This document shows positions 6,201 through 52,242 of a stretch of 64,000 nucleotides of DNA, piece after piece. The DNA is from Scyliorhinus canicula. Lineage: Eukaryota. The number at the start of each line of letters is the position of its first letter. Position 1 is the stretch's first letter. A model generated the notes under the pieces. That model searched no databases, was not told the origin of the DNA, and saw nothing but the letters and a program-made list of their open reading frames with translations. The position numbers and the translations under genes are program-made. The stretch is taken from contig NC_052152.1 of the NCBI RefSeq assembly GCF_902713615.1, positions 68,668,818 to 68,732,817 of the forward strand, read 5' to 3'.

Positions 6201-6233
<33 letters not shown>

Positions 6234-8020: not shown

Positions 8021-8870
8021 GGGGGTAATTTTGCACCCACATCCATCATCAAGTCAACCTGCAACAAAGATGCAAAACCTCGATAGGATCGGCAAAAGGA
8101 GATTTACACCAGCGACGTCTTGTTTCCTAAATTTCCACGGCACTTGCTGGTGATATAATGAAGTTCATGCCCGCAAATCTCATTTTAATAGATTAACATA
8201 TGTTTTAATCTCATTACTGTGCCACCCCCTCGCCACATGTATATTCATATCTCATTGATATGGCACCACATCGTGAGGTTTGCAACGCGTTTGGATAAAT
8301 GAGAATCAGTCTGGGGGACTCCAGAGGTGCAAAAATAAGTATCGTCCCAGGGGAAGAGGGATGTGCGCAGGCAGTGCCTTGGCACTTTCCCTGGTACAGG
8401 TTTTCACTGCCAGGTTGGCACTGCCAGATTGGAAGTGGCAGATTTGCAGTGCCAACCTGGCAGTGCCAACTTATGCCAATCGGTGTCAGGGCAGTGCCAG
8501 GGGTAGGCCCTCTGGGGCACACCATTGGAGGTGGGGTTCATGTTGTTTGTTAGCGGAGGAGCCCCCGATGCTGATGGTGAGGGGGCGGGGGGTGGGGGGT
8601 GGTCGGAAAAGTGCCCAATGCTGATGCTTATGCTGGGGGTGGGAGGAACCGCTGGTGCTGATGCTTGTGGTGGGAGACAGAACCTCTGATGCTGATTGGA
8701 GTGGGGGGGGGGGGGGGGGAGGAGGAGATCCCCTCATGTTTGTAGAGGGAATGGCACCCTATGTCTGGAGGGGGGTGGGGGGTGGGGGAGGGGGGGGGGG
8801 GGATTGGGGAGGGGGAGGAGTTCATTTTCTGTACTGATTGGGACACTGTTTATAAAGAACATCCTGATCT
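8021..8870. mobile_element. Old Harbinger-type non-autonomous element, right end lost
   Basis: Starts CAT|GGGGGTAATTTT, with repeated GGCACTGCC/GGCAGTGCC motifs and G-runs. Truncated by a SINE. Confidence 0.4.
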
Positions 8871-13376: not shown

Positions 13377-14759
13377 GTGATTTTAGTCCAGATTTTGAGT
13401 CGCTGAAAACAAAAATTAGGGAGCGTGGTTTACACCGCAATTGTGGTGGGGCGGGGTCTGGTTGAGGCAGCAAGGCCAGCTCCACAGATGTCTGGGGACC
13501 TATAAAAATGGCGCCTCGATCCATATAGAAAATAACCCCCTCCCCCTCCCGCCTCCCCCCCCCCCCCCCCAGCTCGAGCTCCGATAGTCACAGGGACCCT
13601 CCCTCCACAAACATTGAGGTTGTCCCCCCCCCCCCCCAACCACAAGCATCAGCATCAGGCCCCCCCCGACCCCAAGCACTAGCTTAATTGCACTGAGAAA
13701 ACCAACGCAATCGAACAGAAACTCCAAGCTACTGTTCTTAAACGGTAAGCTTCTTGCGCACCAACCTATCAAGAAAAATCTCAAAATAATCAGCCAGCCA
13801 AAACTGAGCAGGTTTTGAATTCTAAATGGCTTCAGAAACAAGGAACAAGATTAAACCAAAGTAACTATTTACAAAGACATGGGTGCAGAGATGCACCTTG
13901 GGCAGCAACACAATAAAGACAGTATTGCACCGGCCACCTGTTATATTCTCCTCTACATAAATGATTTTGAAAGTGCTGATTTACAGGGAGTGTATGAGAG
14001 GCGGCCAATATAATACCACCTGTTTTGTGCTGCAAGCCAAATTTCTACCCCATTGTTATGAGGAGGAATGCTATTGGACAGATCATTGTTTAAGAACTAT
14101 TTCTCAAATTAGAAGAGATAAGTATGTACCAATTGCCAACATTTATTTGACCTTTTTAAGTTGTGTCAAATTTCTGTAATAATTATTCTTAACTAAAAGG
14201 ACACTTCAGAGTTCCAAACCACTTAACATTAATTTAACCTCCAGTATCTTTGCAGGGCAACCAGGATGTAGGCTCAGTTTGCCACTGAAATAATCCTAGG
14301 GAAATTATTAAAATACATGGCTGTCTAACCAGAAAATATTAGTCAAATAATATTAGTCAAAATAAACTCTTCCATAAATTCAATGATTTTATTCCCATTA
14401 ATTTTCCATCTCCCATTTATCCTGCTTCTCCAAAGACACAGCAAATGGTTTTCACTTAATGACAGATACTGCCTTCCGCAAGCGGGAGGCACAGAGAATA
14501 CTGGATCATTGCTTTCCGCATGTCAAGATTGCTTTTTTGATTGACCAACAAAGCGGTGGACTTGCTGCAAGGGAAAAAATACATCAAAAGATTTTCCTCC
14601 GTCAAGTGGAGTAATCTGCCATCATTCCCAACAGGAAGCAAAGAAAAAAGGAAACAAAGTATTATTTCCAGTTGGCACTTGAACAAGTCTAGCCAGTTAA
14701 AATTTCCACAAAAGGAAATAAAACTTTTCAGTTATTGATTTTTGCAGGAAAGGCCTTAC

Positions 14760-14911
14760 TGTATAGAAATATGCTTGCATTGGTGATCCCAAGCTTGTTG
14801 CCTGCCACGCACGTGTAGTTGCCATAGTGATCCTCCGTAGCATTGGTGACAATGAGACTGGACCGACTGTCCAAGTTCTGGATTTGGATGCCTTGTGAGC
14901 TGTTATATATC
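14760..14911 (-). CDS. lsamp: IgLON-family (LSAMP-like) gene, exon encoding the second half of Ig domain 3
   Basis: 152-bp exon, acceptor ttttcacccttgtcAG, donor GTAAGG, phase 2/1. Encodes (R)IYNSSQGIQIQNLDSRSSLIVTNATEDHYGNYTCVAGNKLGITNASIFLY, which contains the IgLON hallmark YGNYTCVAxNKLGxTNAS. Confidence 0.9.
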
Positions 14912-15984
14912 CTGACAAGGGTGAAAAGAGAAAACAGTCACAAGTTACTCATCCAAAACTATTCTGAAAGTATTTTAGCTCATTGTGGCATTGCATGCAT
15001 TTTATACCCTGGAGTCCCATTTCTAGTTGTCTCCAATATTCAGAATGTTGTCATGTTTTCCTATCTAAATTATGTGTGGAAAAAGTATATTTGCCTGTGA
15101 TGGTATACTCTATAAAAGTGGCTAAGTGTGGAATGCACAATTTGTAGCAATCCTTTTTCAAAAACAGGTTGGTTTTACATATTTCCTTTTAAACAGCTCA
15201 GACCGTTTTGTAGAACTAATTACTTTACAAAATACAGTGACTCTTGCTACATGGACAAATGTTCTCATGTTGTAATTGTTCATCATGTTAAGGCAGAAGG
15301 AAGAGTCAAACAGCTAATTTAAATTTAAAGACTGGCAAAGTCTAAAAGCATATGGAAGGACCAAATGCAATTGTAACCAATGATGTTCAAATACGCAGCA
15401 AGGTTTCATAGATGACAATTCACCTGTCAGGATGATACATAGGGAAATAATGGAAAAATAAAGAAACACATCAGTCGATTGAGTCAGAGAGATTAATGCC
15501 TCAAGGTTCAGTAACTAAGTACTTATCAATAAAATGAAAGACTGGCATGTCCTTGGTGTAGAGTGTGCCTATGATATTATAAGCATCAGGGAAACCTGGT
15601 TGAACAATAGCATAGGTTGGGTAAACATAATGATAAACATATTGCTTTATGGAGATAGTAAATACAAACTGGGGGGCTGATTACTTGTTATGTGAAAGAG
15701 ATTTTGATTATAATGGTTGCAGATCTATTTTGTACATTATGTGGACATAGTATAAATCCTGTGAATGGAGATAAAATATACAGCAAAATTAATTCAAGGC
15801 ATTGACTAGTTTAAAGGTCAGGAGAGACTGGAGCATGAATTTTAGTCAAATTAGGAAATCACATACAGCACCTAATGCAACTGCTGTCAATTATTTAATT
15901 GTGTCAGGAATAGACTGGGAAATTCCTAGCGGGTAGAAGAAGAGCGAAAACATGGTGCTGGGCAGAAGATAGAATCTTTCTGTT

Positions 15985-16140
15985 TAATTTAGAGTAACCA
16001 ATTCCTTTTTTCCAATGAAGGCACAATTTAGTGTGGCCAATCCACCTACCCTACAGACCCACGCAGACACAGGGAGAAGATGCAAACTCCACAAGGACAG
16101 TGACCCAGGGCCATGATCGAACCTGGGTCCTCGGCACTAG
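15985..16140 (-). mobile_element. Short V-domain SINE with A-rich tail
   Basis: AATTTAGAGTAACCAATTC...CAATTTAGTGTGGCCAATCCACCTACC...GCTAACCACTGTGCCACC. Confidence 0.75.
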
Positions 16141-16322
16141 TGCTAACCACTGTGCCACCCTACAATATAGAATGTTACATGGAAAAAATTGGTTAAGCAA
16201 GCATGAGTGTCAGGGAGCAAGTCAAAACAAGCAAAGGTGGAGTGAGTCAGAATATCTTGATAGCACAGAAAGTCCACCACCATTTTCCTCTTGTATTTTT
16301 GAAGTTATTTATGATGAAGATT

Positions 16323-16538
16323 GCATGGTGGCATAGTGGTTAGCATTACTGCCTCATGGCGCCGAGGTTCCAGGTTCGATCCCAGCTCTGGGTCACTATC
16401 CGTGTGGAGTTTGCACATTCACCCCGTATTTGCATGGATTTTGCCTCCACAATTCATAGATCTGCAAGGTAGGTAGGTTGGCCATGCTAAATTGCCTCTT
16501 AATTGGAAAAAATGAATTGGGTACTCTAAATTTAAAAA
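16323..16538 (+). mobile_element. Short V-domain SINE with A-rich tail
   Basis: A box GGTGGCATAGTGG, B box GGTTCGATCCC, V-domain, tail GGGTACTCTAAATTTAAAAA. Confidence 0.8.
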
Positions 16539-16911
16539 GAAAATTGATGAGGAAGATTGTTGACAAACAACACACATTTCTGTCTATCCTCAGGATAGGT
16601 TGTCGATTCAGGACAATTTTCTTAAGCAAACCTTCACTCCCTAATGTTTGCCATTGTTTCTTCAATTCTTGTTCTTGGCAAGTACTATAAAATAATTTCT
16701 AAGTAGGTTTGCACTGTCTGGCCTAATACTTAACTTTAGTGCATTGTATATGGAAGGTTAAGTATCTTCAATTCCATTCACCTTAATTTTAAAAAAAATC
16801 TTTATCAGTGTCACGAGTAGGCTTACATTAACACTGCAATGGAGTTTTAACTAGTCTTCTCCTGTGGAGCTTTTAATCAGGCTTATCTTCAAATTTTATT
16901 TCAACACTCAC

Positions 16912-17032
16912 CGCTTGTCTTCCTTATACCACTCGAAATCTGCTGGTGGGACAGCCGAAACCTCGCAGTGCAGCATCCCAGTACGACCCACTGCAACATC
17001 TGCACTCTGAGCGTACTTAATAGTAGGAGCAT
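16912..17032 (-). CDS. lsamp: IgLON-family (LSAMP-like) gene, exon encoding the first half of Ig domain 3
   Basis: 121-bp exon, acceptor tttgcAG, donor GTGAGT, phase 1/2. Encodes YAPTIKYAQSADVAVGRTGMLHCEVSAVPPADFEWYKEDK(R), with the Ig Cys and FEWY Trp. In frame with both neighbouring exons. Absent from the ORF track. Confidence 0.9.
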
Positions 17033-17754
17033 CTGCAAAGCAATATAAATTCACATATAGAGAGCAGCACTGAAAAAAGGATGATTGTCACATTGTGATG
17101 TAACATTTGCGATATTTTGCAAATGAATACAGCAATTTTAGCCAATTAACAGGTGCTAAAAGCTAAAGCATTCAAGAGTGACCAATGTATGTTTTAATCC
17201 AGAATATTAGCCAGTTTAAGTTAAATGCCTTATTACCTCTAGTAAATTGGCAGAAAGAAGAATACCATATGAATGTTTGAAGTCTTCATCCATTCACATC
17301 ACCAATGATAATTTCTCAGTTTAAGAGGGAGATCTTACATCTGCGTCATTGTTGAATGATCATGATCACCAGCAATATACGTTTGCAAATTGGGTATCCC
17401 TACGGCATGATTTTGTGAACATTTGAATGAAAAAGTCACATGCTGGACGTGGTACAATTACCTCTTGCCAGCTGATGTTCTTGTGGTGAGTGTTGAATTG
17501 GATAGCCTGCCCTGCATCTTCAATGGATATTACAGACACTTGAAAATGCATTGTTTTACAATCTTACAGAATAAATTTCATTGCAATCCCTGGATCTGCC
17601 CTCACTTATATTTGAGTGCCTTGTGTCATGACCACTATCTCGAGACCGCATAGTGGATCTGTACCACCACCTGCTGGCTGGAGGTCGCACCACCACTGTA
17701 TACAACACTGTCTACAGACATATCTCCACAAATCCCACACAGCTGCAGCCACGC

Positions 17755-20828: not shown

Positions 20829-21424
20829 TTATTCCTAACACGTTAAACCCCACGTGACTCCAACCGCATCTGTTGCTTTCAGTTAAATTTCGGTCCTCTG
20901 TGGCAGACCTGTTCAATAGAAATATTGATTGCTGTTCTTATTTATAAAATTGGGACTGAGCAATATTTTTAACGAAGGTAGGAAATAATATACTCAAGGA
21001 ATTGATATACTTAAGGAAATGATTACTTAATGATTATGATCTGCATCATTCAACAATATCCAATACAACGAACAATTATGTATTACGTTAATAACACATG
21101 TGTGAAAACTAATGCATGACAAGGCAATTTGACTTAATTCATAAGACTAGATTCTATAATTTCAATTTACAAAATAATTTGATTGCCTTTTAATTCATTT
21201 TTTTTGTCAATTGGTGCAATTATCAAAGTATTAAATGGGAATTATTTAAAGCTTCTGTACAAAGATGCCTTGTTAATTCTGATTAAATAAATTCTATATT
21301 TAAAATGTGAATCATATAGAAGTCAACAATGTGTTGAATCATTTGACACCTAATTAACTATAGCACTCATTTTTTCTTTTGGATGACAAGAAGAATGAAA
21401 GGAAGAAAGGTCGTGAAGACTTAC

Positions 21425-21559
21425 AGTTAACGGTAATATGGACCATTTGCTCATCGGCAGAGGAAACCTCATTGGCAGCTTTGCACTGGTAAATGCCTGC
21501 TTGGTATCTGCTGATCATGAAGATTTCCAGGTATTCCTCTTCATCATCAATTTCCCTGG
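21425..21559 (-). CDS. lsamp: IgLON-family (LSAMP-like) cell adhesion gene, internal exon encoding the second half of Ig domain 2
   Basis: 135-bp exon, acceptor ttctatctcAG, donor GTAAGT, phase 1/1. Encodes (A)[44 protein letters not shown](Y); EEEYLEI and [11 protein letters not shown] match LSAMP as I recall it. Family is certain, orthology less so. Confidence 0.9.
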
Positions 21560-21789
21560 CTGAGATAGAAGTTAAAGAATGTACTATTAACAACAATAAT
21601 ACTGCATACTCACTCTTTATCTTTCATGAAACTGAATAAAATTGCAGGGGCAATGGATCACAATTTATATTTGACGAGTTATTTATATGTCAGAATCAAA
21701 TCTGATTCCAGAGATGTTCCACACGATTTAACGCAATATAAATAAACCGTTAGAATTCAGCCATTAGTATCAACATTGGTCGAATACTA

Positions 21790-23160: not shown

Positions 23161-24110
23161 ATGGCAGGAGATCCCAGACCCGTGTTATGCTCCTCGTGCG
23201 CAATGTGGGAGTTCAGGGACACGGCCGATGCCCCTGACTTCTTCATGTGCGGGAAGTGTGTCCAGCTGCAGCTCCTGTTAGACCGCATGACGGCTCTGGA
23301 GCTGCGGATGGACTAACTTTGGAGCATCCGCGATGCTGAGGAGGTTGTAGATAGCATGTTCAGTGAGTTGGTCACACCGCAGATTAGGACTGGCGACGGA
23401 GACAGGGAATGGGTGACCAAAAGGCAGAGAAAGAGCAGGAAGGCAGTGCAGGTGTCCCCTGCAGTCATCTCCCTCCAAAACAGGTATACCGTTTTGGATA
23501 CTGTTGGGGGAGATGACTCACCAGGGGAAGGCAGTAGTAGCCAGGCTCATGGCACCGTGGCTAGCTCTGCTGCATAGAAGGGCGGGAAAAAGACTGGCAG
23601 GGCTATAGTCATAGGGGATTCAATTGTAAGGGGAGTAGACCGGCATTTCTGTGGTCGAAAACGAGACTCCCGAATGGTATGTTGCCTCCCGGGTGCTCGG
23701 GTCAGGGATGTCTCCGATCGGCTGCAGGACATACTGAAGGGGGAGGGTGAACAGCCAGTTGTCGTGGTGCATATAGGCACCAACGATATAGGTAAAAAAA
23801 GGGATGAGGTCCTACAATCAGAATTTAGGGAGTTAGGAGATAAGTTAAAAAGTAGGACCTCAAAGGTAGTAATCTCCGGATTGCTACCAGTGCCACGGGA
23901 CAGTCAGAGTAGAAATTCAAGAATAGTCAGAATGAATACGTGGCTTGAGAGATGGTGCAGGAGGGAGGGGGTTCAGATTTTTGGGACATTGGAACCGGTT
24001 CTGGGGGCAGTGGGACCATTACAAACCGGATGGTCTACACCTGGGCAGGACTGGAACCAATGTCCTAGGGGGTGCTTTTGCTAACACTGTTGGGGAGGTT
24101 TTAAACTAAT
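23161..24110 (+). pseudogene. CR1 ORF1: CxxC..CxxC zinc finger, coiled coil and SGNH-esterase domain (disrupted)
   Basis: MAGDPRPVLCSSCAMW...CGKCVQLQLL, then VIGDSIVRG, HIGTNDI and DGLHL motifs. Stops at ~23314 and ~23575, frameshift ~23970. Confidence 0.85.
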
Positions 24111-24199
24111 GTGGCAGGGGGATGGGGACCTGATTAGGAAGTTAGAGGTCAGTAAAGAAGCAGCAACTAAAGCCACTAAGGGGAAGAGTAGACAGGGAA

Positions 24200-26988
24200 G
24201 AGATGATGAACGCAAAGGTGGTCTGAGGTGCATTTATTTTAATGCAAAAGTGTAGCAGGTAAGGCAGATGAACTTAGGGCTTGGATCAGTACCTGGGAAT
24301 ATGATGTTATTGGTATTACTGAGACTTGGTTGAGGGAAGGGCAGGACTGGCAACTGAATATCCCAGGGTATAGATGCTTCAGGAGGGATAGAGAGGGAGG
24401 TAGAAGGGGTGGAGGAGTTGCATTACTCGTCAGAGATGATATCACAGCTGTGATTAAGGAGGGCACGATGGAGGATTCGAGCACTGAGGCAATATGGGTG
24501 GAGCTGAAAAATAGGAAGGGTGCAGTAACATTGTTGGGACTTTACTACAGGCCTCCCAAAAGCGAGCATGAAGTAGAGGTACAAATATGCAGACAGATTA
24601 TAGAAAAATGTAGGAGAAATAGGGTGGTTGTGATGGGAGATTTTAACTTCCCCAACATTGAATGGGATTTGTGTAGTGTTGGAGGCGTAGATGGAGCAGA
24701 GTTTGTAAGGAGCATCCAGGAGAGTTTTTTAGAGCAGTATGTAAATAGTCCAACTCGGGAAGGGGCCATACTGGACCTGGTATTGGGGAATGATCCCGGC
24801 CAGATGGTTGATGTTTCAGTCGGTGATTACTTTGGGAATAGCGATCACAATTCCGTAAGTTTTAGAATACTCATGGACAAGGACAAGAGTGGTCCGAAAG
24901 GAAGAGTACTAAATTGGGGAAAGGCAGAGTATAACAAAATTTGGCAGGAGCTAGGGAATGTGGATTGGAAGCAGCTGTTTAAGGGTAAATCCACATTTGA
25001 AATGTGGAAGTCTTTTAAGGAAAGGTTGATTAGAGTGCAGGACAGACATGTTCCTGTGAAAATGAAAGATAGAAATGGCAAGATTAGGGAACCATGGATG
25101 ACGGGTGAAATTGTGAGACTAGCTAAGATGAAAAAGGAAGCATACATAGGATCGAGGCAACTCAAAACTGATGAAGCTTTGGAGGAATATCGGAAAAGTA
25201 GGACGAATCTCAAACGCGCAATAAAGAGGGCTAAAAGGGGTCATGAAATATCTTTGGCTAACAGGGTTAAGGAAAATCCCAAAGCATTTTATTCGTATGT
25301 AAGGAGCAAGAGCGTAACTAGAGAAAGGATTGGCCCACTTAAAGACAAAAGAGGGAATTTATGCGTGGACTCAAAGGAAATGGGTGAGATTCACAAAGGA
25401 GAGGGACAAGATGGATGTTGAGGCTAGGGATGGATGTTTAAATACTCTTGGTCAAGTTGTCATACGGAAAGGGGAAGTTTTGGGTATTCTGAAAGACATT
25501 AAGGTGGACAAGTCCCCAGGACCGGATGGGATCTATCCCAGGTTGCTGAGGGAAGCGAGGGTCGAAATAGCTGGGGCCTTAACAGATATCTTTGCAGCAT
25601 CCTTGAGCACGGGTGAGGTCCCGGAGGACTGGAGAATTGCTAATGTTGTCCCTTTGTTTAAGAAGGGTAGCAGGGATAATCCAGGGAATTACAGACCTGT
25701 GAGCTTGACGTCAGTGGTAGGCAAACTGTTGGAGAAGATACTGAGGGATAGGATCTATTCACATCTGGAAGAAAATAGACTCATCAGTGATAGGCAGCAT
25801 GGTTTTGTGCAGGGAAGGTCATGTCTTACAAACCTAATAGAATTCTTTGAGGAAGTGACAAAGTTAATTGATGAGGGAAGGGCTGCAGATGTCGTATACA
25901 TGGACTTTAGTAAGGCGTTTGATATGGTTTCCCACGGCAGGTTGATGGAAAAAGTGAAGTCGTATGGGGTTCAGGGTGTACTAGCTAGATGGATAAAGAA
26001 CTGGCTGGGCAACAGGAGACAGAGAGTAGTGGTGGAAGGGAGTGTCTCAAAATGGAGAAGGGTGACTAGTGGTGTTCCACAGGGATCCGTGCTCGGACCA
26101 CTGATGTTTGTGATCTACATAAATGACCTGGAGGAAGGTATAGGTGGTCTGATTAGCAAGTTTGCAGATGATACTAAGATTGGTGGAGTTGCAGATAGCG
26201 AGGAGGACTGTCAGAGAATACAACAAAATATAGATAGATTGGAGGGTTGGGCAGAGAAATGGCAGATGGAGTTCAATCCAGGCAAATGCGAGGTGATGCA
26301 TTTTGGAAGATCAAATTCAAGAGCGGACTATCTGGTCAATGGAAGGGTCTTGGTGAAAATTGATGTGCAGAGAGATCTGGGAGTTCAGGTCCATTGTACC
26401 CTGAAGGTGGCAACGCAGGTTGATAGAGTGGTCAAGAAGGCATACAGCATGCTTGCCTTCATCGGACGCGGTATTGAGTACAAGAGTTGGCAGGTCATGT
26501 TACAGTTGTATAGGACTTTGGTTCAGCCACATTTGGAATACTGCGTGCAGTTCTGGTCGCCACATTAACAGAAGGATATGGATGCCTTGGAGAGGGTGCA
26601 GAGGAGGTTCACCAGGATGCTGCCTGGTATGGAGGGTGCTAGCTATGAAGAAAGGTTGAGTAGATTAGGATTATTTTCATTGGAAAGACTGAGGTTGAGG
26701 GGGGACCTGATTGAGGTCTACAAAATTATGAGAGGTATGGACAGGGTGAATAGCAACAAGCTTTTCCCAAGAGTGGGGGTGTCAGTTACGAGGGGTCACG
26801 ATTTCAAGGTGAGAGGGGGAAAGTTTAAGGGAGATGTGCGTGGAAAGTTTTTTACGCAGAGGGTGGTGGGTGCCTGGAACGCTTTACCAGCGGAGGTGGT
26901 AGAGGCGGCCACGATAGCATCATTTAAAAATCATCTAGACAGGTATATGAATGGACGGGAACAGAGGGAAGTAGACCTTGGAAAATAG
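24200..26988 (+). pseudogene. CR1 ORF2: APE endonuclease plus reverse transcriptase (disrupted)
   Basis: ITETWL, GGGVAL, YRPP, GDFN and SDHN (endonuclease); [17 protein letters not shown] and KFADDTK (RT). Frameshifts ~24247 and ~25391, stop at 26566-26568. Confidence 0.92.
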
Positions 26989-27482
26989 GAGACAGGTTTA
27001 GATAAAGGATCTGGATCGGCGCAGGCTGGGAGGGCCGAAGGGCCTGTTCCTGTGCTGTAATTTTCTTTGTTCTTTGTTCTTTGATATGGAAAGATAGAGA
27101 TGAGTTCTGCAATCTGAAAGCCAATCTCATCTCGAAGATGTTATCAAGAAACAACAGGTAAATAAAGGTGGAAGGGAATAAGGATGGGGATGACAGGTGA
27201 CGATACTAAAAATGGAATAGAAGCCATTTTAAAAAATAAAGTACTGATTCTTCAAATTTGATGGAGCCAGGAGAGAGCAGTGCCACATGGTGACATCCTC
27301 GAGAGGAATGTTCACAGATGATAACCCCCTCAAAATCATATATACATCTAAAAAGGTGAGTGATATGTAGCATAGAAGAACAGAATACATTTTAATCATT
27401 ACATTATTATTAATCATTATATTACATTATTTTATTACATTACATTTTATTATCATTACATTATTAATCACAGTATTATTGA

Positions 27483-32971: not shown

Positions 32972-34170
32972 TGAGACAGAGACTAACAGAGTGACATTGA
33001 GAGATCGGGGCAGGTGATGGAGAATTTGGTGGGAGGGTTAGAAATTGGTTTTATGCCAGCACGATCTTCCACTGGTGCTCGCCATGGCAGATTGGAAATT
33101 CCATCAGAGACCAGCATGAAACGAATGGGGTCCAAATGGGGCCCGATCAGAATCTTGCCCCCACACCTGATCCTCCACAATGCCCGCAGGACAGCACGTT
33201 GGTGTGAAGCATGTCTGGAACATCTTGGTGTACAGGTGTCAGGACTCACCTGAACAATGCCTGGAGCTGCCTCTGGAGTTCAGGATGGAAGCTGACGTCA
33301 ACCCTGGACCCCAGAACACCACAGCAGTGGGTAGAGGGAGATCTGTCAGCGCAACGTCCAGATCCCCCTCTGGGAGGGGGTCCATCTTCCAGCCCCAGCA
33401 TGTTCCTGGAGATCCATCTTCTTTCTCAGGAGGCCCAGCCTCCACACTCAAGAGTGCGACCAGAAATCCAATTTCATTTTCAGGAGGTCCACCTTCTTTT
33501 ATTCAACAGGAGGTTGGTGATGCAAGATGGTGACCAGATAGGGTAACAGACTATGAATGTGGTGCAAAACACCCAGTTGCATAATTAATTAGGTCAGGGC
33601 CAGAAAAGTCTGCAGTGGGAAACACTCCGCGTTCCTCCCTCACCAAACAGAGGACTTAGTCCCCAAATTTGAAAATTCTGCCCAAGAGAGGCTGAGACAG
33701 ATTGACAGAAATTGAGAGAATGAGAGAGAGAGAGAGAGAAAAAAAATAATATTTGCTGCATTACAGCAAGTCAAACATTTCCGGAACAATATAAAACTGG
33801 AACTCTTATCACACTTAAATAACTGCATAATAGAAGCATGGCAAGCAGGGTCCCAAGTTGGATCCAGTAATGATTCCATATATTTTGGAGATCTATGGCG
33901 ATTTGGAGATCCCATTCTCCATCATTGGAGAAAATTAGATATGGATGTCATCCTGATATTATTCATTCGAAAGGAGCTGACAAAGGGTAGCTCTCCCGAA
34001 CACTACATACATCACTTAGTCCATGCATTCATAGACAGCAATTTAATATTACGCATAACGGATGGAATTTTCCAAAAGTTACAGAGTGCTGCATCAGATG
34101 AGAAAAACAGAGGGACACTCTGTGCAATTTCAAAGTGCTGGTGAGGATTACACAGCTAGCTTTGGGGTGG

Positions 34171-34213
<43 letters not shown>

Positions 34214-34419
34214 TGGGGGGGGTGGCGGGGGGGGGGACTGTGCCTCAACCATGTGAGGCAGGGATTCGGAGATCTGGGTGCCATTTTTATAGGGCGGCCC
34301 AAATTCAAAGTGAAGTTAAAGGCAACCCCCCTTTCCCCCGCACATTGAGACCACCAGCAGACAGGGGGAACATCCCCAACCCTCCAACAAAGAGGACCTA
34401 CCCCCCTCCCCAACCTCTG

Positions 34420-35160
34420 GTAGAACCCTCAAGAGTATTGACAGTCAGAGAGATCTGGGTGTACAGGTCCACAGGTCACTGAAAGGGGCAACACAGGTTA
34501 AGAAGGTAGTCAAGAAGGCATACAGCATGCTTGCCTTCATTGGCCGGGACATTGAGTATAAAAATTGGCGAGTCATGTTGCAGCTGCATAGAACCTTAGT
34601 TAGGCCACATTTGGAGTATAGTGTTCAATTCTGGTTGCCACACTACCAGAAGAATGTGGAGGCTTTCGAGAGGGTGCAGAAGAGATTTACCAGGATGTTG
34701 CCTGGTATGGAGGGCATTAGCTATGAGGAGAGGTTGAATAAACTCGGTTTGTTCACACTGGAATGACGGAGGTTGAGGGGCAATCTCACAGAGGTCTACA
34801 AAATTATAAGGGGCATAGACAGAGTGGATAGTCAGAGGCTTTTCCCCAGGGTAGATGGGTCAATTACTAGGGGGCATAGGTTTAAGGTGCGAGGGGCAAG
34901 GTTTAGAGGAGATGTACAAGGCAAGTTTTTTTACACAGAGGGTAGTGGGTGCCTGGAACTCGCTGCCGGAGGAGGTGGTGGAAGCAGGGACGATAGTGAC
35001 ATTTAAGAGGCATCTTGACAAATACATGAATAGGATGGGAGTAGAGGGATACGGACCCAGGAAGTGTAGAAGATTTTAGTTTAGACAGGCAGCATGGTCG
35101 GCACAAGCTTGGAAGGCCGAAGGGCCTGTTCCTGTGCTGTACTTTTCTTTGTTCTTTGTT
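34420..35160 (+). mobile_element. CR1 LINE 3' fragment inserted in an old MITE (~34060-35543)
   Basis: MLAFIGRDIEYK...RFTRMLPG and FFTQRVVGAWNSLP, then a (GTTCTTT)n tail. Confidence 0.9.
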
Positions 35161-35285
35161 GACAGTGACCCAAAGCTGGGATTGAACCTGGGACCTCGGC
35201 GCCGGGAGGCAGTAATGCCAGCCACTGTGCCATCGTGCAATCTTCACCATAAATAACTTCAAAATACAAGAGAAAAATGGTGGTG
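35161..35285 (-). other. Inverted copy of local intronic sequence 16275-16400, flanked by duplicated CR1 tails
   Basis: About 89% match by eye to the reverse complement of 16275-16400, including ~48 bp of non-SINE flank. CTTTTCTTTGTTCTTTGTT occurs at 35142-35160 and again at 35286-35304. Confidence 0.85.
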
Positions 35286-36688
35286 CTTTTCTTTGTTCTT
35301 TGTTCACTCAGTAGTCAGGTCACCCACGCACCCCCACCAGCATCAGGGTGACCTGACCCCATCCCTATCTTCGCTGGCATTGGGGCAACCCCCATATTGA
35401 AATGAATTTAAATTCATGGTCATCAGGTTCAGACAGGCCATGAACCTGATTATCTTACCAGCAGGGGTTGGGAAAGCTCTCAAAGTGAGATCTCGCCACC
35501 GCAAACCCCATTGTGGCTCTCTCGCGAGAGTTAGCGGCCAGAATCTGTGCCCAAGACGAACGTGTCCACAAAATTGCAGCTAATGTCAATGCTAGACTGC
35601 ATGTAATTGCAGATATAATAGGTGTGAGAGGTGACTTTAACTGATGGCCCTGTTGCTCTGTGCAGAATGCTTTCAGGTGTTCTTCCAAAAAATGTATTGT
35701 TTGACAGTTGCCTCAATGGTGACTCGGGTATACAGAGACCCAGTCCTCTGACACTGCCTTGTAGGTTTGTTGGGGTCTGCAGGTACTGGTGGCGACATGA
35801 TGGTGGTATTCATGCTAATTTCCTGATATGCCTTCTTTCACCTTCCAACACTTTAAGTATTATGTAATAATTCCAGGAGGTGTAGGATAAAAGGCAAAAC
35901 AGGGTTATTCTCCAACACAAATAAAGCAACAGCATAAAAAACAAATGTCCCAACAGAAGACTATTGGGAACTGCCGGTCCGGGTCCCAGGTCGATATTTA
36001 AGGCCCCGCTGGAGAGCTCCTGTTGGGCAAGCCTCTATCCACACAACACTGTAATCTACGATCAATAAGCGATCCCCCGCGATCTTCGTGAGGTTATAAC
36101 ATCCCTCCCATTCCCGTGACAAAAGGGCCTCTTCTGTCTTTTAGCACCAAGCCTCAGATCTCTGGTAAGTGGAGCTGGATTATTGGGTGTGAAGCGTAGT
36201 GGAGACGTCTGCTTCCTCAATGAGCGCCTGAGAGTTACGGAAGCTGGCTCATCCTCAGTGTTGGCTTCTGATCCTGAGTCTTTACACTCGGGCGGGAATA
36301 GGCCTAGGGCCCCCCACGGCTGAGACTTTGTGCCGGAGGTGCCTGAATTTGCGTTGAGGACGTAGTTTCCATTGGACTGGGCTCCATAATCCTCAGATGA
36401 TCCACGTCTTTTTTCACAGATTTTCCTGGGACCATGGGTGGAATTATCCGCTCCCGCGCGGCATCGGGAAGGACGTCGTGAACTTGGCTGAGTTTCACGA
36501 CGGCTCTACACGGCCCGGTTCCCGAATGATTCTGGCCCCGGAAATGGGCTCGGAGCGGGGCCGCGGGAAACATGTGGGGAATGACGGCAAAAGCCCGCGA
36601 CCCCCGTATGACGCCAGAATGGCGCCCGAGTGATGCCGCTCCGCGTCGTAAAAGGGCGCAAGCGACCAAAACAAGTGAGGGCCTGACA

Positions 36689-37207
36689 ATGACGGAGCCA
36701 CGGAGGGCCGCCCCGAGGTTCGGGGAGGCTGGCCTCGAGACCCTCCTCGTTGAGGTGGAGCAACGGAGGGGCATCATCTGCCCTAGAAGAGGTCATCGCC
36801 ACCCTGCCAGCGTTGTGCGACGGACCTGGTGTGAGGTGGGCACGGCAGTGAGTGCTGTGGGGCAGACCCCTCGGTCTGGGGAGCAGTGCCGGAAGAAGCT
36901 CCACGACCTCACCAGGCCTACCAGGCTAAGTGCCAAGAGGGTGCCCCGGGTTACAAAAGTCCCCCCCCCCCAATGTCCCTCATCACCCACCTCCCCCCCC
37001 CCCCGGGCACGAGGAGGAGGGGGAGGGGGGGGCCTGAGTGAGTGGAGGGTGGTTAGCCAAGTTGTCACAATGCAAATGAGCGCTGTGACCCCCTGGAGAG
37101 ATGCCATGGTGTAGCTGCAACTGTCCCCCCAACCTGTGCCAATATCTGAACGCCCTGATGATACCTGCCGAATTGTGATGATCTATCCATGCCCCCCCCC
37201 CCCCCCC

Positions 37208-37244
<37 letters not shown>

Positions 37245-38569
37245 ACAGGACAAGACTGCTCACAACAACCGGGAGCGGAACAGGACCAGAGGGGGTTCAC
37301 CCATTCTGCACCCCCTGACAGTCTTTGAAGAGAGGGCACTGGACCTTGCTGGGGAATCTGGCACCGGGGAGGTCGCGCAATGCGAGGTTGGAGATGCAGA
37401 ACCAAGTGAGACAACCCTGCATGACAAGCCCCCCTAGCCCATCCTCTGTCCCCTCACACTCTACCCACTGGACCCCCCATCCTCTGTCCCCTCACACTCT
37501 ACCCACTGGACCCCCCATCCTCTGTCCCCTCACACTCTACCCACTGGACCCCCCATCCTCTGTACCCTCACACTCTACCCACTGGACCCCCCATCCTCTG
37601 TACCCTCACACTCTACCCACTGGACCCCCCATCCTCTGTCCCCTCACACTCTACCCACTGGACCATCCTACGCCCGGCCGAGCGTGTCTAACTGACCTCG
37701 TATTATTCTGTTCCCTAGGGCGTGGTGACGAACGTCCAGGGCTGTCTGCTGCCACACACAGGCGCCCATCTGCCACGACCACCGCACCCAGGGCCGCACG
37801 CCAGAGGGTGGCAGGAGGTCAGCCAGGAGTGCCATCCTCCCAACCCCGGACCCTCGAGCAGGACGCACAAAGGACGGCGACACACTCAACAGAGTCACCT
37901 GAGGGAGAACCACACTTGGGCCGCATGGCACGGTCCCAGCAGGTCATGACCCAGTCCCAGCACGCCATGGCACAGTCGCGGCAGGCCATGGCACAGTCCC
38001 AGCAGTCAGTCGCGGAGAGCATCAACCGCCTGACGGACGTGCTGGATGGCATCGCGCACTCACGGGTTGAGGTCGCACAGTCCCTGGCGGGAATGTCTCA
38101 CTCCCTGGACTCCGTCTCTGTGAATGTTCGGACCCTGGTCGATACCGTTGCAGGCCTCCAGGACTGGCAGTGCCAGGTGTCGATCGGGTGACGGGGCACC
38201 TCCCCACTCGCACCTCCGTCCCACAGTGAGGTCCAGGGGCCACCGGGCTCCCCGAGGGTGGAGGAGGTTCTGGGGTCCGTCCCATTAACTCCATCACGGG
38301 ACGTCCCTGAATGCTCGGCCTCCCCCCGTCCCATCCCTGGTGCATCGGGTGGGCAGCAGGCAGAGCAGGGTGGCACCACATCATCCAAAACGCCTGCAGA
38401 GCAGCCTTGCACATCAAGGCCGGGTCGCCCCAGGAAACGAGTGCCGACGGAGAGACATGTCGCGGGTGGTAATTCTCAGCAGTCCGCCTCCACTCCTGCT
38501 GTATCATCTGGGGATTCACTTAGACGTAGTGGTAGGGCCCGTAAGGCAATGAAGAGGGACATAGGGTAA
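36689..38569 (+). pseudogene. Harbinger Myb/SANT-like (trihelix) DNA-binding protein gene, 3 exons: 36689-36925, 37249-37405, 37719-38569
   Basis: APRFGEAGLETLL...WCEVGTAVSAVGQTPRSGEQCRKKLHDL. Intron phases 0 and 1 are consistent. The first donor reads CTAAGT rather than GTAAGT, and there is an in-frame TGA at 38189-38191. Coiled-coil-like segment and an AT-hook-like RPGRPRK near the C-terminus; ATTAAA at ~38634. Confidence 0.85.
37438..37664. repeat. Minisatellite, 6 x 38 bp
   Basis: Unit CCCCATCCTCTGT(C/A)CCCTCACACTCTACCCACTGGACC with period 38, in intron 2 of the Myb gene. Confidence 0.95.
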
Positions 38570-39117
38570 GTTGGCACGGGTGAAGGGCACAGTTTAGTTG
38601 TAGGGGCTAGGGCATCTGTACATAATATTCACCATTAAACTCACTGTTGCACCTAACGTGTAAGTGTGATTTTTCCATTGACACGGGGATCATGATGGTG
38701 ACCGAGTGTCGCTGGGGTTGACGAGCGGTGAAACTTCAGTGCTGGGTGTGCAGTCCCTTCCCCCCCACCCCCTCCCACAGCTACCCCACGCAGGCACGTG
38801 ATGGAGTGTCCCTGACGAACTCAGCGACCACCGAGATGGATGGTTCAGCTATTGCCATGACTCAGACTTTGTCTAACGATTCTGAGCTCACAGCTCATCG
38901 CAGATCGGGCTGTCATCATTCAACATGGCACTGATCACACCCGCTGACACAGCCATCAATGTTGTGCTATACTGTCTGGCCACAGTGGTAAGGGTGATTT
39001 AGAACTGGAGCAGTGTACGCAGAGCGGGGATGCGGGGGTGGGGGGGGGTGGGGGTGGGGGTCGGGGTAGGAGTTGTGTGCTGACCGTCTGCACGACTGGC
39101 CATGCAGGTGGTAGTGT

Positions 39118-40438
39118 TCAGCGGTGCCGTCGCACGCAGCGCTTGAATCTTGCTGCCACCAAGGCGTCGCATGCCCGCTGTCCTCGCCGGTGCCGTCGTG
39201 CAGCCTCCTGGACATTACCAGCACCCGGGTCGTGTCTGTGTGCTGCGCCCGACGCACCACCAACTTCCTCCTCCTCCTCCTACGCGTCTCCGTGTTGGCA
39301 CCACTGCCAGTGGCTTCTCCCTCCAACTCCTCCATCAGGGCATCTCCCCTCTGCATCGCGATGTTGTGCAGCGCACAGCAGACCACTACAATACGAGCGA
39401 CCCTGTCGGGCTGGTACTGCAGGGCCTCTCCGGGGCGGTCCAGGCACCTGAATCGCATTTTCAGCAGACCAAAGCAGCGCTCCACCACACCCCTGGTTAC
39501 TGCATGGGCCTCATTGTAAAGGGTCTCTGCGTTGGTCTGAGGCCTCCGTATGGGCGTCATCAGCCAAGACCTCAGTGGATAACCCCTGTCGCCCAGCAAC
39601 CAGCTCCTCAGCCGGGGGGGGGGCGTCCCTCAAACGTAGCAGGGATGAATGACTGCGCATGAATGTACGCATCATGCACACTTCCAGGGAACCTTGCGCA
39701 CACGTGCATGATCTTCATGTGGGGGTCGCATACCACCTGGATATTCATGGAGTGTGTCCCCCTCCTGTTTGTGAACACTTCCCTGTTGCCTGCAGGTGGG
39801 CGCATGGGGACGTGAACACAATCAATGACCCCCTGGACCATCGGTATCCCGGCCACGTTGGCAAATGAACGGGCTTGTGCATCTTGACTTGCTCGGTCCT
39901 CGGGAAATGTAATGTAGAGGTCGGCGATGGCATAGAGGGCGTCGGTCACATCTCGGATGCACCTGTGCACCGATGACTGCGAGATCCCGGATAGGTCCCC
40001 GCTTGGAGACTGGAAGGAAGCGGTCGCCTACAAGTTAAGTGCCACCGTCACCTTGACGGCAACCGAGATCGCGTGTCCTCCTCCCGTTCCACGTGGGGCG
40101 AGGTGCGCCACAAGGTGACAGATATGTGTCACCGTCTCTCTGCTCAACCGGAGTCTCCTCCTGCAGGTGATGTCCGGCATTGTCTCGAAAGAGATCTGGC
40201 CATGGTACACCCTCGGCCTTGCTCGTCACCTCTGGCGCCCTGGCTCCACTATCAATGCCTCCTCCTCCTCCTCCCTGCCATGCTGCTCGGCGACGGGCCA
40301 CTCCGTGGCCATTCTTTCTGCTGCTGCAGCTGCCCCTGCATCCACTGTGGGATGTGGCTGTGGATGCTGCTGGATGTCCAACTGCAGTGCAGCGGCCCCA
40401 ACCACTGCGCTGAACATAGCCGTTCTGTTTGAATACAT
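39118..40438 (-). pseudogene. Harbinger (HARBI1-family) DDE transposase, disrupted
   Basis: [60 protein letters not shown] and CCALHN. Stops at 40226 and 40028; frameshifts at ~39615 and ~39290. Confidence 0.92.
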
Positions 40439-40759: not shown

Positions 40760-41872
40760 ACTCACTCTCCCCCCTCCCCCCCCACTCGCTCTCCGCCCCC
40801 CTCTCCCACTTCTCCCTACTCTCCCACTTCTCCCTCTCCCCCCCACTTCTCCCTCTCCCCCCCCACTTCTCCCTCTCCCCCCACTTCTCTCTCTCCCCCC
40901 ACTACTCGCTCTCCCCCCCACTTCTCCCTCTCCCCCCCACTTCTCCCTCCCCCCCACTTCTCCCTCTCCCCTCTCACCCCCCACTTCTCCCTCACCCCCC
41001 CACTTCTCCCTCTCCCCTCCCCCTCCTCCCTCTCCCACCCCACTTCTCCCTCTCCCCCCACTACTCCCTCTCTCCCCCCACTACTCCTCTCTCCTCTCCC
41101 CCCCACTACTCCCTCTCTCCCCCCCACTTCTCCCTCTCCCCCCACTTCTCCTTCTCCCCTCTCCCCCCACTTCCCCCTCTCCCCCTCCCACTTCTCCCTC
41201 TCCCCCCACTTCTCCCTCTCTCCCCCCCACTACTCCCTCTCTCCTCTCCCCCCCACTACTCCCTCTCTCTCCCCACCTCTCCCTCTCCCCCCACTTCTCC
41301 TTCCCCCCTCTCCCCCCACTTCCCCCTCTCCCCCCTCCCACTTCTCCCTCTCCCCCCCACTTCTCCCTCTCTCTCCCCCCTCACTACTCCCTCTCCCCCC
41401 CCCACTACTCCCTCTCTCCCCCCACTACTCCCCTCTCTCCCCCCACTTCTTCCTCTCCCCCCCACTTCTCCTTCTCCCCTCTCCCCCACTTCTCCCTCTC
41501 TCCCCCCTTTTCCTCCCTCTCCCCCCCACTTCTCCCTCTCTTCCCCCTCCCACTATCTCCCTCTCCCCTCTTCTCCCCCACTACTCCCTCTCTCCCCCCC
41601 ACTTCTCCCTCCCCGCCCCCACTTCTCTCTCTCTCCCCCCCCACTTCTCCTTCCCCCCACTTCTCCCCCCCACTTCTCCCTCCCCCCCCACACCCCCCAC
41701 TTCTCCCTCCCCCCACTTCTCCCTCCCCGCCCCCACTTCTCCCTCTCTCCCCCCCCCACTTCTCCCTCCCCCCACTTCTCCCCCCCCCACTTCTCCCTCC
41801 CCCCCACTCCCCCCCCCACTTCTCCCTCCCCCCCACTTCTCCCCCCCCCCCACTTCTCCCTCCCCCCCCACT
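40760..41872. repeat. 1.1-kb polypyrimidine/polypurine low-complexity tandem array
   Basis: Degenerate CCCCCACT(T/A)CTCCCTCT units with almost no G on the plus strand. Accounts for the spurious Pro/Ser-rich and Gly/Glu-rich ORFs. Confidence 0.95.
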
Positions 41873-51616: not shown

Positions 51617-52242
51617 GGGCGCGATTCTCCCAAATGGAGACAGAGTGTTCACGCCGTCGCATTTCATGACGGTGTAAAATGGGCACGGGCACGACCGATT
51701 CTGGCCCCCTGCATGGCACTGGGGCGGTTTATGCCGCTCCAGTCTACCTTCCAGGCGCCAACTGGGTGCCGTGAAAACCCGTGCATGCGCAGTTGGGCCG
51801 TGCCAACAGGCGAATGCGTGAGGGACTTCCTCAATGCGCCGGCTCCGAGGCAACATGGTGTGGGGGTTCAGGGACCGGCCGAGTAAAATAGGTCTGGGGC
51901 TGGAGAGGCTGGCCCGCCGATCGGTTGGCCCCAATCGCGGGCCAGACCCCATCGGAGGCCCCCCCACCCCCGGTGAAGGAGTGCTTTTCCCCACCCCACA
52001 GGTTGCACCCCGACCCTACGCGCAGAGTTCCAACCAGCTGCGAGCAGTTGTGAAAGGTGCCGACGGGACTCTGACGTTTCCCCGCGGCCCTCGGCCCATC
52101 AAGGCCAGAGAATCGGTGGCCCGGCCGCAGACAGCAGCCAGAGAATCTCGTGGGGCGGAGAATTCGGGACTCGGCGGGGGCGGGATTGATGCCGGCCCCG
52201 GGCGATTCTCCGACCCCCCCGGGGGTTCGGAGAATTCCACCC
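51617..52242. mobile_element. Harbinger MITE abutting the truncated LTR
   Basis: TIRs GGGCGCGATTCTCC and GGAGAATTCCACCC. Confidence 0.82.

What the first reader, a model, noticed from the sequence alone, without database searches (positions are those of the whole stretch)
35142..35304. A piece of the host gene's own intron captured inside a CR1 3' tail: candidate template jump onto nascent pre-mRNA
Seen: a plus-strand CR1 ends in CTTTTCTTTGTTCTTTGTT (35142-35160). It is followed by 125 bp matching the reverse complement of 16275-16400 (about 14 differences by eye), then the same 19-nt tail again (35286-35304). The copy includes ~48 bp of non-SINE flank (AATCTTCA.CATAAATAACTTCAAAATACAAGAG.AAAATGGTGGTG) as well as the SINE head, so it appears to come from that locus 19 kb away. 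Read in the CR1 RNA sense, the insert is in the sense of the minus-strand LSAMP-like pre-mRNA. Inference: during target-primed reverse transcription the RT copied the CR1 tail, jumped to the locally transcribed intron RNA, then re-primed on the CR1 3' end. This would be a tail-insert-tail chimera and would imply the gene was transcribed in the germline or early embryo at the time.
Basis: partly seen in the sequence, partly recalled or inferred. Interest (0 to 1): 0.75.

Follow-up and report, generated by a model that had tools for sequence, protein, structure and literature searches.

The report
Host intron piece inside CR1 tail
A shark CR1 jumping-gene copy carries, between two identical copies of its 19-base tail, a 125-base copy of an intron segment from the same nerve-cell adhesion gene 19 kb away; this is most likely a reverse-transcriptase template-switching accident, though a DNA-repair copying error is not excluded.

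Summary
The two 19-nt copies (35142-35160, 35286-35304) are identical. They bracket 125 nt that matches the reverse complement of 16275-16400 with 13 mismatches and 1 indel, and homology stops exactly at both junctions. The donor is locus-specific: it spans the junction between unique intron DNA and a SINE that has its own 12-nt target-site duplication. The host gene is an IgLON (LSAMP-like) gene on the minus strand, and the donor lies in a ~2 kb intron, so the insert is in pre-mRNA sense. The duplicated 19-mer is the whole single-stranded tail, from 2 nt after the conserved CR1 3' hairpin to the element's end. None of eight other CR1 3' ends (four here, four in Scyliorhinus torazame) has an insert. 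This position favours CR1 reverse-transcriptase template switching (about 0.5). No RNA hallmark is present, both junctions are blunt, and a nearby inverted template also fits DNA-level templated repair (about 0.25). Dating fits in the unique flank, but the SINE-head part is unexpectedly diverged. I could not run genome-wide copy number, read support or orthologous sites. The germline-transcription inference is not shown. The scan earlier noted a 28S rRNA-CR1 chimera elsewhere in this genome.

The parts
34418..35141 (+). 5'-truncated CR1-like LINE copy: the C-terminal end of ORF2 (one in-frame stop, one frameshift) plus the 3' UTR
   Evidence: In-window BLAST to CR1 copies at 26359-27078 (77%) and 9215-9892 (65%). 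The 5' boundary comes from a three-copy alignment. It is 87% identical, gaps included (6.2% substitutions), to S. torazame L001:10961-11637.
35099..35139 (+). Conserved 3' hairpin: an outer stem CGGCAC/GTGCTG enclosing GGGCC-GAAG-GGCC. This is the presumed RT-binding site, and it ends 2 nt before the tail.
   Evidence: RNAalifold consensus of five CR1 3' ends gives 13 pairs, all sequence-conserved and without covariation. The hairpin-plus-microsatellite architecture is described for CR1 in bioRxiv 10.1101/081950.
35142..35160 (+). Tail copy 1 (19 nt, about 2.3 units of TTCTTTG)
35161..35285 (+). Insert X: 35161-35238 is antisense to the first ~78 nt of a tRNA-derived SINE, and 35239-35285 is a copy of the unique intron flank upstream of that SINE
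   Evidence: Global alignment to the reverse complement of 16275-16400: 13 mismatches and 1 indel. X shares 7 derived states with the donor SINE against 8 other SINE heads.
35286..35304 (+). Tail copy 2, identical to tail copy 1 and followed by unrelated flank (CACTCAG...)
16275..16400 (-). Donor segment, read in host pre-mRNA sense. It lies in the ~2 kb intron between the two Ig3 half-exons.
16323..16546 (+). Donor-locus SINE (tRNA-derived head, antisense to the host gene), flanked by a 12-nt target-site duplication at 16311-16322 and 16547-16558 (11 of 12 match)
   Evidence: Sequence read. SINE extent from in-window BLAST.
15977..16164 (-). Second SINE in inverted orientation about 160 nt from the donor SINE. 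It could form dsRNA with the donor SINE in the pre-mRNA.
   Evidence: 69.7% identity to the donor SINE over 221 nt
21357..21623 (-). Stop-free stretch containing the host exon for the C-terminal half of Ig domain 2 (IgLON family)
   Evidence: phmmer against PDB finds OPCML, neurotrimin and NEGR1 at chain residues ~146-197.
16911..17087 (-). Stop-free stretch containing the host exon for the N-terminal half of Ig domain 3
   Evidence: PDB hits are IgLON5, neurotrimin, NEGR1 and OPCML at chain residues ~187-237.
14731..14937 (-). Stop-free stretch containing the host exon for the C-terminal half of Ig domain 3
   Evidence: PDB hits are NEGR1 (E = 1e-17), neurotrimin and OPCML at chain residues ~227-286.
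23674..27085 (+). Comparator: a longer CR1-like copy with the same tail type. It has an ORF1 esterase, an AP endonuclease, an RT, the hairpin and a (TTCTTTG)3 tail, and no insert.
   Evidence: Pfam: Lipase_GDSL_2/OSK, Exo_endo_phos_2, RVT_1. 3' end read.

Best explanation
While this 5'-truncated CR1 copy was being integrated by target-primed reverse transcription, the CR1 reverse transcriptase switched templates. It first copied the 19-nt single-stranded tail of a CR1 RNA (now tail copy 2) and stopped 2 nt short of the 3' hairpin. The growing cDNA then moved to a local RNA, the intron of the surrounding IgLON/LSAMP-like gene. The move may have been helped by imperfect similarity between the tail and the sequence just downstream of the donor segment. 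The enzyme copied 125 nt there, jumped end-to-end onto the 3' terminus of a CR1 RNA, recopied the tail (tail copy 1) and continued into the CR1 body. A near-equivalent variant is two successive priming events at the same nick. Shown: the structure, the local and locus-specific donor, the sense orientation, the exact match between the duplicated piece and the CR1 tail, and the absence of the insert in other copies. Inferred: that a reverse transcriptase did it, that the template was RNA, and that it happened at CR1 integration.
For: (1) The tail-X-tail structure is exact. (2) The duplicated 19-mer runs from 2 nt after the conserved hairpin to the element's last base, so it covers the whole tail on which CR1-type enzymes initiate (bioRxiv 10.1101/081950). 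A break or fork collapse unrelated to CR1 would have to hit both boundaries by chance. (3) X is in the CR1 RNA sense and in host pre-mRNA sense. The three IgLON exons are collinear on the minus strand, and the donor is intronic. A Pol III SINE transcript is excluded, because X is antisense to the SINE and includes 48 nt upstream of it. (4) The copy went from 16 kb to 35 kb: X contains the flank/SINE junction of a SINE that has its own 12-nt target-site duplication, and it shares 7 derived states with that SINE copy. (5) Eight other CR1 3' ends have no insert. (6) Blunt junctions fit the homology-independent end-to-end template switching reported for non-LTR and group II intron RTs (abstract of bioRxiv 10.1101/792986). 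The homeology at junction 2 is 8 of 12, with a background frequency of 0.034. (7) Age: CR1_35k has at most 2.1% private substitutions, and the unique-flank part of X has 2 differences where 2.0 are expected. (8) The window holds no other short, high-identity, two-copy duplication of non-repeat DNA, so local DNA copying is not common here. (9) Template switching by CR1 RT onto other RNAs has been proposed before. An earlier scan note reports a 28S rRNA-CR1 chimera in this genome (not checked here).
Against: X shows no RNA hallmark: no splice junction, no processed end, no poly(A). The donor is an unremarkable intron RNA, not an abundant small RNA like the usual partners in LINE chimeras. Its closeness in cis is at least as natural for a DNA template. 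The model needs two switches, including a return to the very 3' end of a CR1 RNA. The two tails have exactly the same length although tails vary from 13 to 25 nt among copies, which a simple DNA duplication gives automatically. The SINE-head part of X differs from the donor far more than the CR1's age predicts (11 against 3.2 expected, p = 5e-4). I found no target-site duplication enclosing the whole CR1-tail-X-tail unit. This is a single case, and I had no genome-wide, read-level or comparative data.
Confidence: 0.5

Rival explanations
1. DNA-level templated insertion after the CR1 was already in place. A stalled fork or broken end at the CR1 3' hairpin/T-rich tail switched to a nearby DNA template 18.8 kb away in inverted orientation, copied 125 nt, and returned 19 nt behind the point of departure (FoSTeS/MMBIR or synthesis-dependent repair). 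That leaves the insert flanked by a 19-bp duplication. No RNA and no germline transcription are needed.
For: The template is nearby in cis and inverted, and the insert is short. These are the described signature of replication-based templated insertions (PMC8421209; PMC7954356 abstract). The two tails are identical in length by construction. X has no RNA hallmark. There is imperfect similarity at junction 2. A hairpin next to a T-rich microsatellite is a plausible stalling site.
Against: Neither junction has exact microhomology (0 nt), whereas microhomology defines MMBIR. Both ends of the 19-bp duplication coincide, within 0-2 nt, with the boundaries of the CR1 tail. That is unexpected for an event unrelated to CR1. 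The templated insertions that PMC8421209's tool was built to detect have templates within 100 bp, not 19 kb. No other such local duplication exists in the 64 kb window. A later event should make X younger than the CR1, which worsens the excess divergence in the SINE head.
Confidence: 0.25
2. A separate, later retro-insertion into the old CR1 tail. A LINE endonuclease nicked the existing tail, and the exposed tail-complementary DNA end primed on the similar stretch of the intron RNA. A 125-nt cDNA was made, and the staggered second nick produced a 19-bp target-site duplication that happens to equal the tail. A sub-variant is an RT in the CR1 integration complex copying local single-stranded DNA instead of RNA.
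For: A 19-bp duplication is within the usual LINE range ('mostly no >20 bp', PMC6007223). The donor SINE itself has a 12-bp duplication, so such machinery was active here. The bottom strand of a CR1 tail would pair with the donor's downstream TTTCTGTG stretch. CR1/L2/RTE 3' ends overlap target sequence by one to several bp.
Against: X ends in GGTGGTG, with no poly(A) and no LINE tail or hairpin. Neither a relaxed L1-type nor a stringent CR1-type enzyme would be expected to select it. Priming on the similar stretch should have kept the donor's two extra bases (GA), which are missing. The right end of the duplication coinciding with the CR1 terminus is unexplained. The age argument is the same as for the DNA rival.
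Confidence: 0.12
3. The true donor is not the 16 kb locus, or the structure is not real. The flank-plus-SINE unit could be part of a larger duplicated or multicopy segment with a closer copy elsewhere, or the tail-X-tail could be an assembly error.
For: I could not test genome-wide copy number. The SINE-head part of X is more diverged from the 16 kb locus than expected. All attempts to reach other data on this locus came back blank.
Against: The flank/SINE junction was made by one SINE insertion with its own target-site duplication. The unique flank is only 4% diverged. X is 11% different from the donor, so it is not a mis-joined read from that locus. A 19-nt repeat is too short to mislead a modern assembler (inference). 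The flank has only two copies in the window.
Confidence: 0.1

Closest known systems
Bipartite LINE chimeras made by RT template switching (U6/L1 and other small-RNA/L1 or mRNA/L1 chimeras; bioRxiv 10.1101/2025.02.02.635956; PMC4476161)
   Same: A LINE reverse transcriptase that began on its own RNA continues on a second cellular RNA. Both parts are in the same sense, and the LINE part is 5'-truncated.
   Different: In those chimeras the foreign RNA lies 5' of the LINE part after a single switch. It is usually an abundant small nuclear RNA or a spliced mRNA, and one target-site duplication encloses the chimera. Here the foreign piece lies 3' of the LINE body between two copies of the tail, so it needs two switches or two primings. 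It is unspliced intron from the same gene, and I found no enclosing duplication.
CR1-RT template switching onto a tRNA (origin of PittSINE; bioRxiv 10.1101/081950 / PMC5729268), and the 28S rRNA-CR1 chimera noted earlier in this genome (s1-278503)
   Same: The same kind of stringent CR1 enzyme, which starts at a hairpin plus short microsatellite tail, and a proposed switch to a 'nearby' RNA during target-primed reverse transcription.
   Different: Those products are tail-proximal CR1 sequence joined to a foreign head after one switch. None has the tail repeated on both sides of the foreign piece or a donor from the surrounding gene.
Replication- or repair-based templated insertions (MMBIR/FoSTeS; PMC8421209; short-range template switching, PMC7954356)
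   Same: A short insert copied from a nearby template in inverted orientation, with duplication of sequence at the insertion point.
   Different: Those are defined by microhomology at the junctions and have no reason to respect the boundaries of a LINE tail. Here both junctions are blunt, and the duplication equals the CR1 tail.
LINE 3' transduction (L1-poly(A)-flank-poly(A))
   Same: The outward look is the same: a LINE end, extra non-LINE sequence, then the LINE-type tail again.
   Different: Transduced sequence is the source element's own downstream flank and is shared by its progeny. Here the donor locus has no CR1 next to it, and eight other copies lack the extension.

Membership tests
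CR1-clade LINE (the element that carries the insert) | ORF2 with an AP-type endonuclease and a reverse transcriptase | tested here: met
   Tested on the longer sister copy with the same tail type (23674-27085): Exo_endo_phos_2 E = 1.5e-11 and RVT_1 E = 6.5e-36, with an esterase-type ORF1 upstream. The 35k copy itself keeps only the C-terminal end of ORF2.
CR1-clade LINE (the element that carries the insert) | 3' end made of a conserved hairpin followed by a short microsatellite-like tail, with no poly(A) | tested here: met
   The hairpin is conserved in 5 of 5 window copies, followed by 2-3 units of a 7-mer. It was also seen in S. torazame copies. The pairs are invariant, so there is no covariation support.
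CR1-clade LINE (the element that carries the insert) | Phylogenetic placement of the RT inside the CR1 clade and not in L2, Rex1 or another clade | tested here: inconclusive
   The nearest proteins are shark and ray RTs (65-74%), then hundreds of bird and turtle RTs (~50%), some named 'mobile element jockey' by NCBI. This is suggestive of CR1, but I built no tree.
LINE-RT template-switch chimera | The foreign segment is in the same sense as the LINE and directly abuts LINE 3' sequence | tested here: met
   X is in the CR1 sense and is joined bluntly to the CR1 tail on both sides.
LINE-RT template-switch chimera | The foreign segment is demonstrably RNA-derived (processed ends, splicing, full-length small RNA) | tested here: not met
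   X is unspliced intron plus an antisense SINE head with arbitrary ends. The A>G excess over G>A (5 against 1) is not significant, and most of it is explained by changes on the donor lineage.
LINE-RT template-switch chimera | One target-site duplication encloses the whole chimera | tested here: inconclusive
   I found no convincing duplication between 34300-34650 and 35305-35340, only chance 7-8-mers. From my own knowledge, CR1 insertions often have short duplications or none.
MMBIR/FoSTeS templated insertion | Template nearby, often in inverted orientation | tested here: met
   The template is 18,761 nt away in cis and inverted.
MMBIR/FoSTeS templated insertion | Microhomology at the switch junctions | tested here: not met
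   Both junctions have 0 nt of exact microhomology. There is only imperfect similarity downstream of junction 2 (8 of 12, background 0.034) and none at junction 1.
TSD-flanked LINE-mediated retrocopy | Direct repeat of typical length at both ends | tested here: met
   A 19-bp perfect direct repeat. The usual range is up to about 20 bp (PMC6007223).
TSD-flanked LINE-mediated retrocopy | The insert ends in the tail the mobilising LINE recognises (poly(A) or a LINE 3' end) | tested here: not met
   X ends in GGTGGTG in one orientation and GGGTCACTGTC in the other.
LINE 3' transduction | The extension is the source element's downstream flank and recurs in related copies | tested here: not met
   There is no CR1 end beside the donor (shuffle p = 0.09-0.65). 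Eight other CR1 3' ends lack it. The sample is small.

The most novel reading that the evidence does not exclude
CR1 reverse transcriptase, while integrating into an intron, used RNA of the surrounding gene as a transient template (nascent pre-mRNA or the excised 2 kb intron). Tail-X-tail chimeras would then be fossil records of which RNAs lay next to integration sites in germline or early-embryo nuclei. Here that would record germline-lineage transcription of a neuronal IgLON gene. If such chimeras recur genome-wide, they would form a natural proximity record of RNA and chromatin in deep time.
Probability: 0.35. Interest if true: 0.6.

Novelty: new variant of a known kind. Interest (0 to 1): 0.4.

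Why it matters
Template switching by LINE reverse transcriptases is well known, but the recorded partners are mostly abundant small RNAs or mRNAs joined 5' of the LINE. A foreign piece held between two copies of a stringent-type LINE tail, taken from the host gene's own intron, would show three things. First, a CR1 enzyme can abort after the tail. Second, it can copy a local RNA. Third, it can re-initiate on a CR1 3' end. That bears on how CR1-type enzymes start synthesis and how new SINE-like chimeras arise. It would also give a way to read past germline transcription from genome sequence. As a single unreplicated case with a live DNA-repair alternative, its main present value is as a search pattern for a genome-wide test.

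Tried and rejected
1. Outside copies or independent assemblies of the junction. Exact-protein look-ups of four ORFs that overlap or adjoin the structure found nothing on record. A word-based protein search with the ORF spanning tail2-X-tail1 gave no hits. The scan index by sequence was blank.

2. Orthologous site through a neighbouring coding anchor. The Harbinger DDE exon found only a 77%-identical S. torazame HARBI1 gene at an unrelated locus. I did not obtain the orthologous site.

3. An old CR1 end beside the donor, which would have suggested transduction or recombination. The local alignments are not better than shuffles.

4. A target-site duplication around the whole CR1 unit. None was found.

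5. An ADAR-type RNA editing signature in X. A>G is the commonest change (5 of 13), but it is not significant, and three of the five sites are better read as donor-lineage G>A changes (two of them CpG decays).

6. ARAGORN does not call the SINE head as a tRNA.

7. Pfam finds nothing in the C-terminal ORF2 fragments of the 35k copy.

8. I searched the host-gene exons one at a time by reference. I did not find the exon for the N-terminal half of Ig2 in the window.

CR1 and SINE copies were only compared column by column.
Full report
**What is there**

On the plus strand a 5'-truncated CR1-like LINE copy runs from about 34418 to 35141 and ends in a 19-nt tail (35142-35160). Then come 125 nt of foreign sequence (X, 35161-35285), then the same 19 nt again (35286-35304), then unrelated flank.
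- The two 19-mers are identical. This 19-mer with up to three mismatches is expected 0.08 times by chance in the window.
- X aligns end to end with the reverse complement of 16275-16400: 13 mismatches and one 1-nt indel, 88.9% identity, E = 5e-36.
- Homology stops exactly at both junctions.

**The donor is that locus**

At 16323-16546 a tRNA-derived SINE lies on the plus strand, flanked by a 12-nt target-site duplication (16311-16322 and 16547-16558, 11 of 12 matching). The junction between the unique upstream DNA and the SINE head was therefore created by one insertion at this place.
- X contains that junction: about 78 nt of SINE head plus about 47 nt of upstream flank.
- X shares seven derived states with this SINE copy against eight other SINE heads. 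Seven changes are private to X and four to the donor.
- In the window the flank occurs only at these two places. The next best SINE head is 80% identical to X.

So the copy went from 16 kb to 35 kb. I could not test whether further copies exist elsewhere in the genome.

**Host gene and strand**

Three stop-free stretches on the minus strand each match IgLON-family proteins in collinear order:
- 21357-21623: C-terminal half of Ig2
- 16911-17087: N-terminal half of Ig3
- 14731-14937: C-terminal half of Ig3

The matching proteins are OPCML, neurotrimin, NEGR1 and IgLON5. I searched the exons one by one by reference and made no joined model. By my recollection of LSAMP the residues look LSAMP-like, but I established only IgLON membership.

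The donor sits in the ~2 kb intron between the two Ig3 half-exons. The CR1 sits 18.8 kb upstream in transcription terms, in a larger intron, and is antisense to the gene. A Pol III transcript of the SINE cannot be the template, because X is antisense to the SINE and includes 48 nt upstream of its start.

**The element**

A longer sister copy with the same tail type (23674-27085) encodes an esterase-type ORF1, an AP endonuclease and an RT. Its RT is closest to shark and ray copies, then to a large set of bird and turtle RTs. I built no tree.

All five CR1 3' ends in the window share a conserved hairpin that ends 2 nt before a tail of two to three 7-mer units. This is the hairpin-plus-microsatellite start site described for CR1 (bioRxiv 10.1101/081950).

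**The key anatomical point**

The duplicated 19-mer is not an arbitrary piece. It begins 2 nt after the hairpin and ends at the last base of the element, so it is the whole single-stranded tail. Among eight other CR1 3' ends, tails are 13-25 nt long and run straight into unrelated flank. Four of these are in the window and four in about 64 kb of Scyliorhinus torazame DNA fetched through RT and transposase proteins. None has an insert. Ordinary 3' transduction is therefore unlikely, and no CR1 end lies beside the donor.

**Junctions**

Both junctions are blunt, with 0 nt of exact microhomology.
- Downstream of the donor segment the intron reads GAC-TTTCTGTG against the tail's CTTTTCTTTG. This is 8 of 12, a level reached at 3.4% of window positions. 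BLAST extends the alignment through it.
- A clean switch there should have kept two donor bases that are missing.
- Junction 1 has no similarity at all.
- The three bases outside each tail copy also match 2 of 3. I treat this as unexplained.

**Dating**

A same-subfamily CR1 copy from S. torazame (L001:10961-11637) differs from the 35k copy by 6.2% substitutions. I polarised the differences with the 27k copy.
- The 35k copy has 14 private changes in 664 columns (2.1%, interval 1.2-3.5%). This is an upper bound on its decay since insertion.
- If X arose with the CR1, X and the donor should differ by about 4%.
- The unique-flank part does: 2 substitutions in 48 nt, with 2.0 expected.
- The SINE-head part does not: 11 in 77 nt, with 3.2 expected (p = 5e-4). 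Only three of these are at CpG.
- A>G in RNA sense is the commonest change (5), which raised the idea of ADAR editing. An inverted SINE partner lies 160 nt away and could form dsRNA. But the A>G excess over G>A is not significant, and most of these sites are better read as donor-lineage changes.

The head excess is unexplained. Candidate causes are a hypermutable GC-rich head, ectopic conversion, error-prone copying and RNA editing. It argues, if anything, against X being younger than the CR1.

**Weighing the mechanisms**

The reverse-transcriptase reading explains why both ends of the duplication coincide with the boundaries of the CR1 tail, why X is in the CR1 sense, and why the junctions are blunt. 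Non-LTR and group II intron RTs switch end-to-end without homology (abstract of bioRxiv 10.1101/792986). The reading also fits the documented habit of LINE RTs, including CR1, of switching to other RNAs. An earlier scan note reports a 28S rRNA-CR1 chimera in this genome, which I did not check.

Its weak points are these:
- It needs two switches, or two primings at one nick.
- The partner is an unremarkable intron RNA.
- X has no RNA hallmark.
- The two tails are exactly the same length.

The DNA-level alternative explains the nearby, inverted template and the identical tails naturally (PMC8421209). It lacks its defining microhomology and leaves the match with the tail boundaries to chance. The window holds no other local duplication of this kind. 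A later retro-insertion with a 19-bp target-site duplication is possible, but X lacks any tail that a LINE enzyme would recognise.

My odds:
- RT template switching at CR1 integration: about 0.5
- DNA-level templated insertion: about 0.25
- later TSD-flanked insertion, or an RT copying local DNA: about 0.12
- other donor or artefact: about 0.1

**What follows and what does not**

The structure is real and locally templated. The claim that the gene was transcribed in the germline or early embryo depends wholly on the template having been RNA, which is not shown. The decisive tests were out of reach here:
- copy number of the flank in the whole genome
- long reads across the junctions
- the state of the orthologous site in S. 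torazame and other sharks
- a genome-wide census of tail-X-tail cases with their orientation relative to transcription

Noticed in passing
window 15977-16164 (-) and 16323-16546 (+): Two tRNA-derived SINEs lie in inverted orientation about 160 nt apart inside the ~2 kb intron that splits the Ig3 domain of the IgLON gene. In the pre-mRNA they could pair into a long imperfect duplex (about 70% complementary).
   Followed up: partly
window 52242-52800 and 57333-57890: A 560-nt direct repeat at 92% identity, 4.5 kb apart, which is most likely the two LTRs of an LTR retrotransposon. A minus-strand ORF between them (55714-55989) carries a CCHC zinc-knuckle-like motif.
   Followed up: no
window 23674-27085 (+): A nearly full-length CR1-like LINE with ORF1 carrying a GDSL/SGNH esterase (OSK-like) domain, an AP endonuclease, an RT, the 3' hairpin and a (TTCTTTG)3 tail. 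The reading frames are broken into several ORFs.
   Followed up: partly
window 34153-34240, also 6173-6237, 8759-8819, 13536-13573, 37187-37247, 41630-41883: Long poly-G / G-rich tracts recur across the window. One lies immediately upstream of the 5'-truncated CR1 copy.
   Followed up: no
window 36572-37114 (+) and 38967-39599 (-): Pfam confirms a Myb/SANT-like ORF and a DDE_Tnp_4 transposase exon. The nearest S. torazame HARBI1-like protein is only 77% identical and sits at an unrelated locus.
   Followed up: partly
L001:11600-11660 (S. torazame, GCA_003427355.1 BFAA01000695.1): The S. torazame CR1 copy of the same subfamily has a disrupted tail. After GTACTTTT it continues with GAGGAAGAAC and a T-rich run instead of the 7-mer repeats.
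   Followed up: no
window 35139-35163 versus 35283-35307: With three bases added on each side, the direct repeat is 25 nt with two mismatches (GT[A/G]...[G/C]AC). The flanking 2-of-3 matches on both sides have a chance probability of roughly 0.02-0.05 and no clear mechanistic role.
   Followed up: partly
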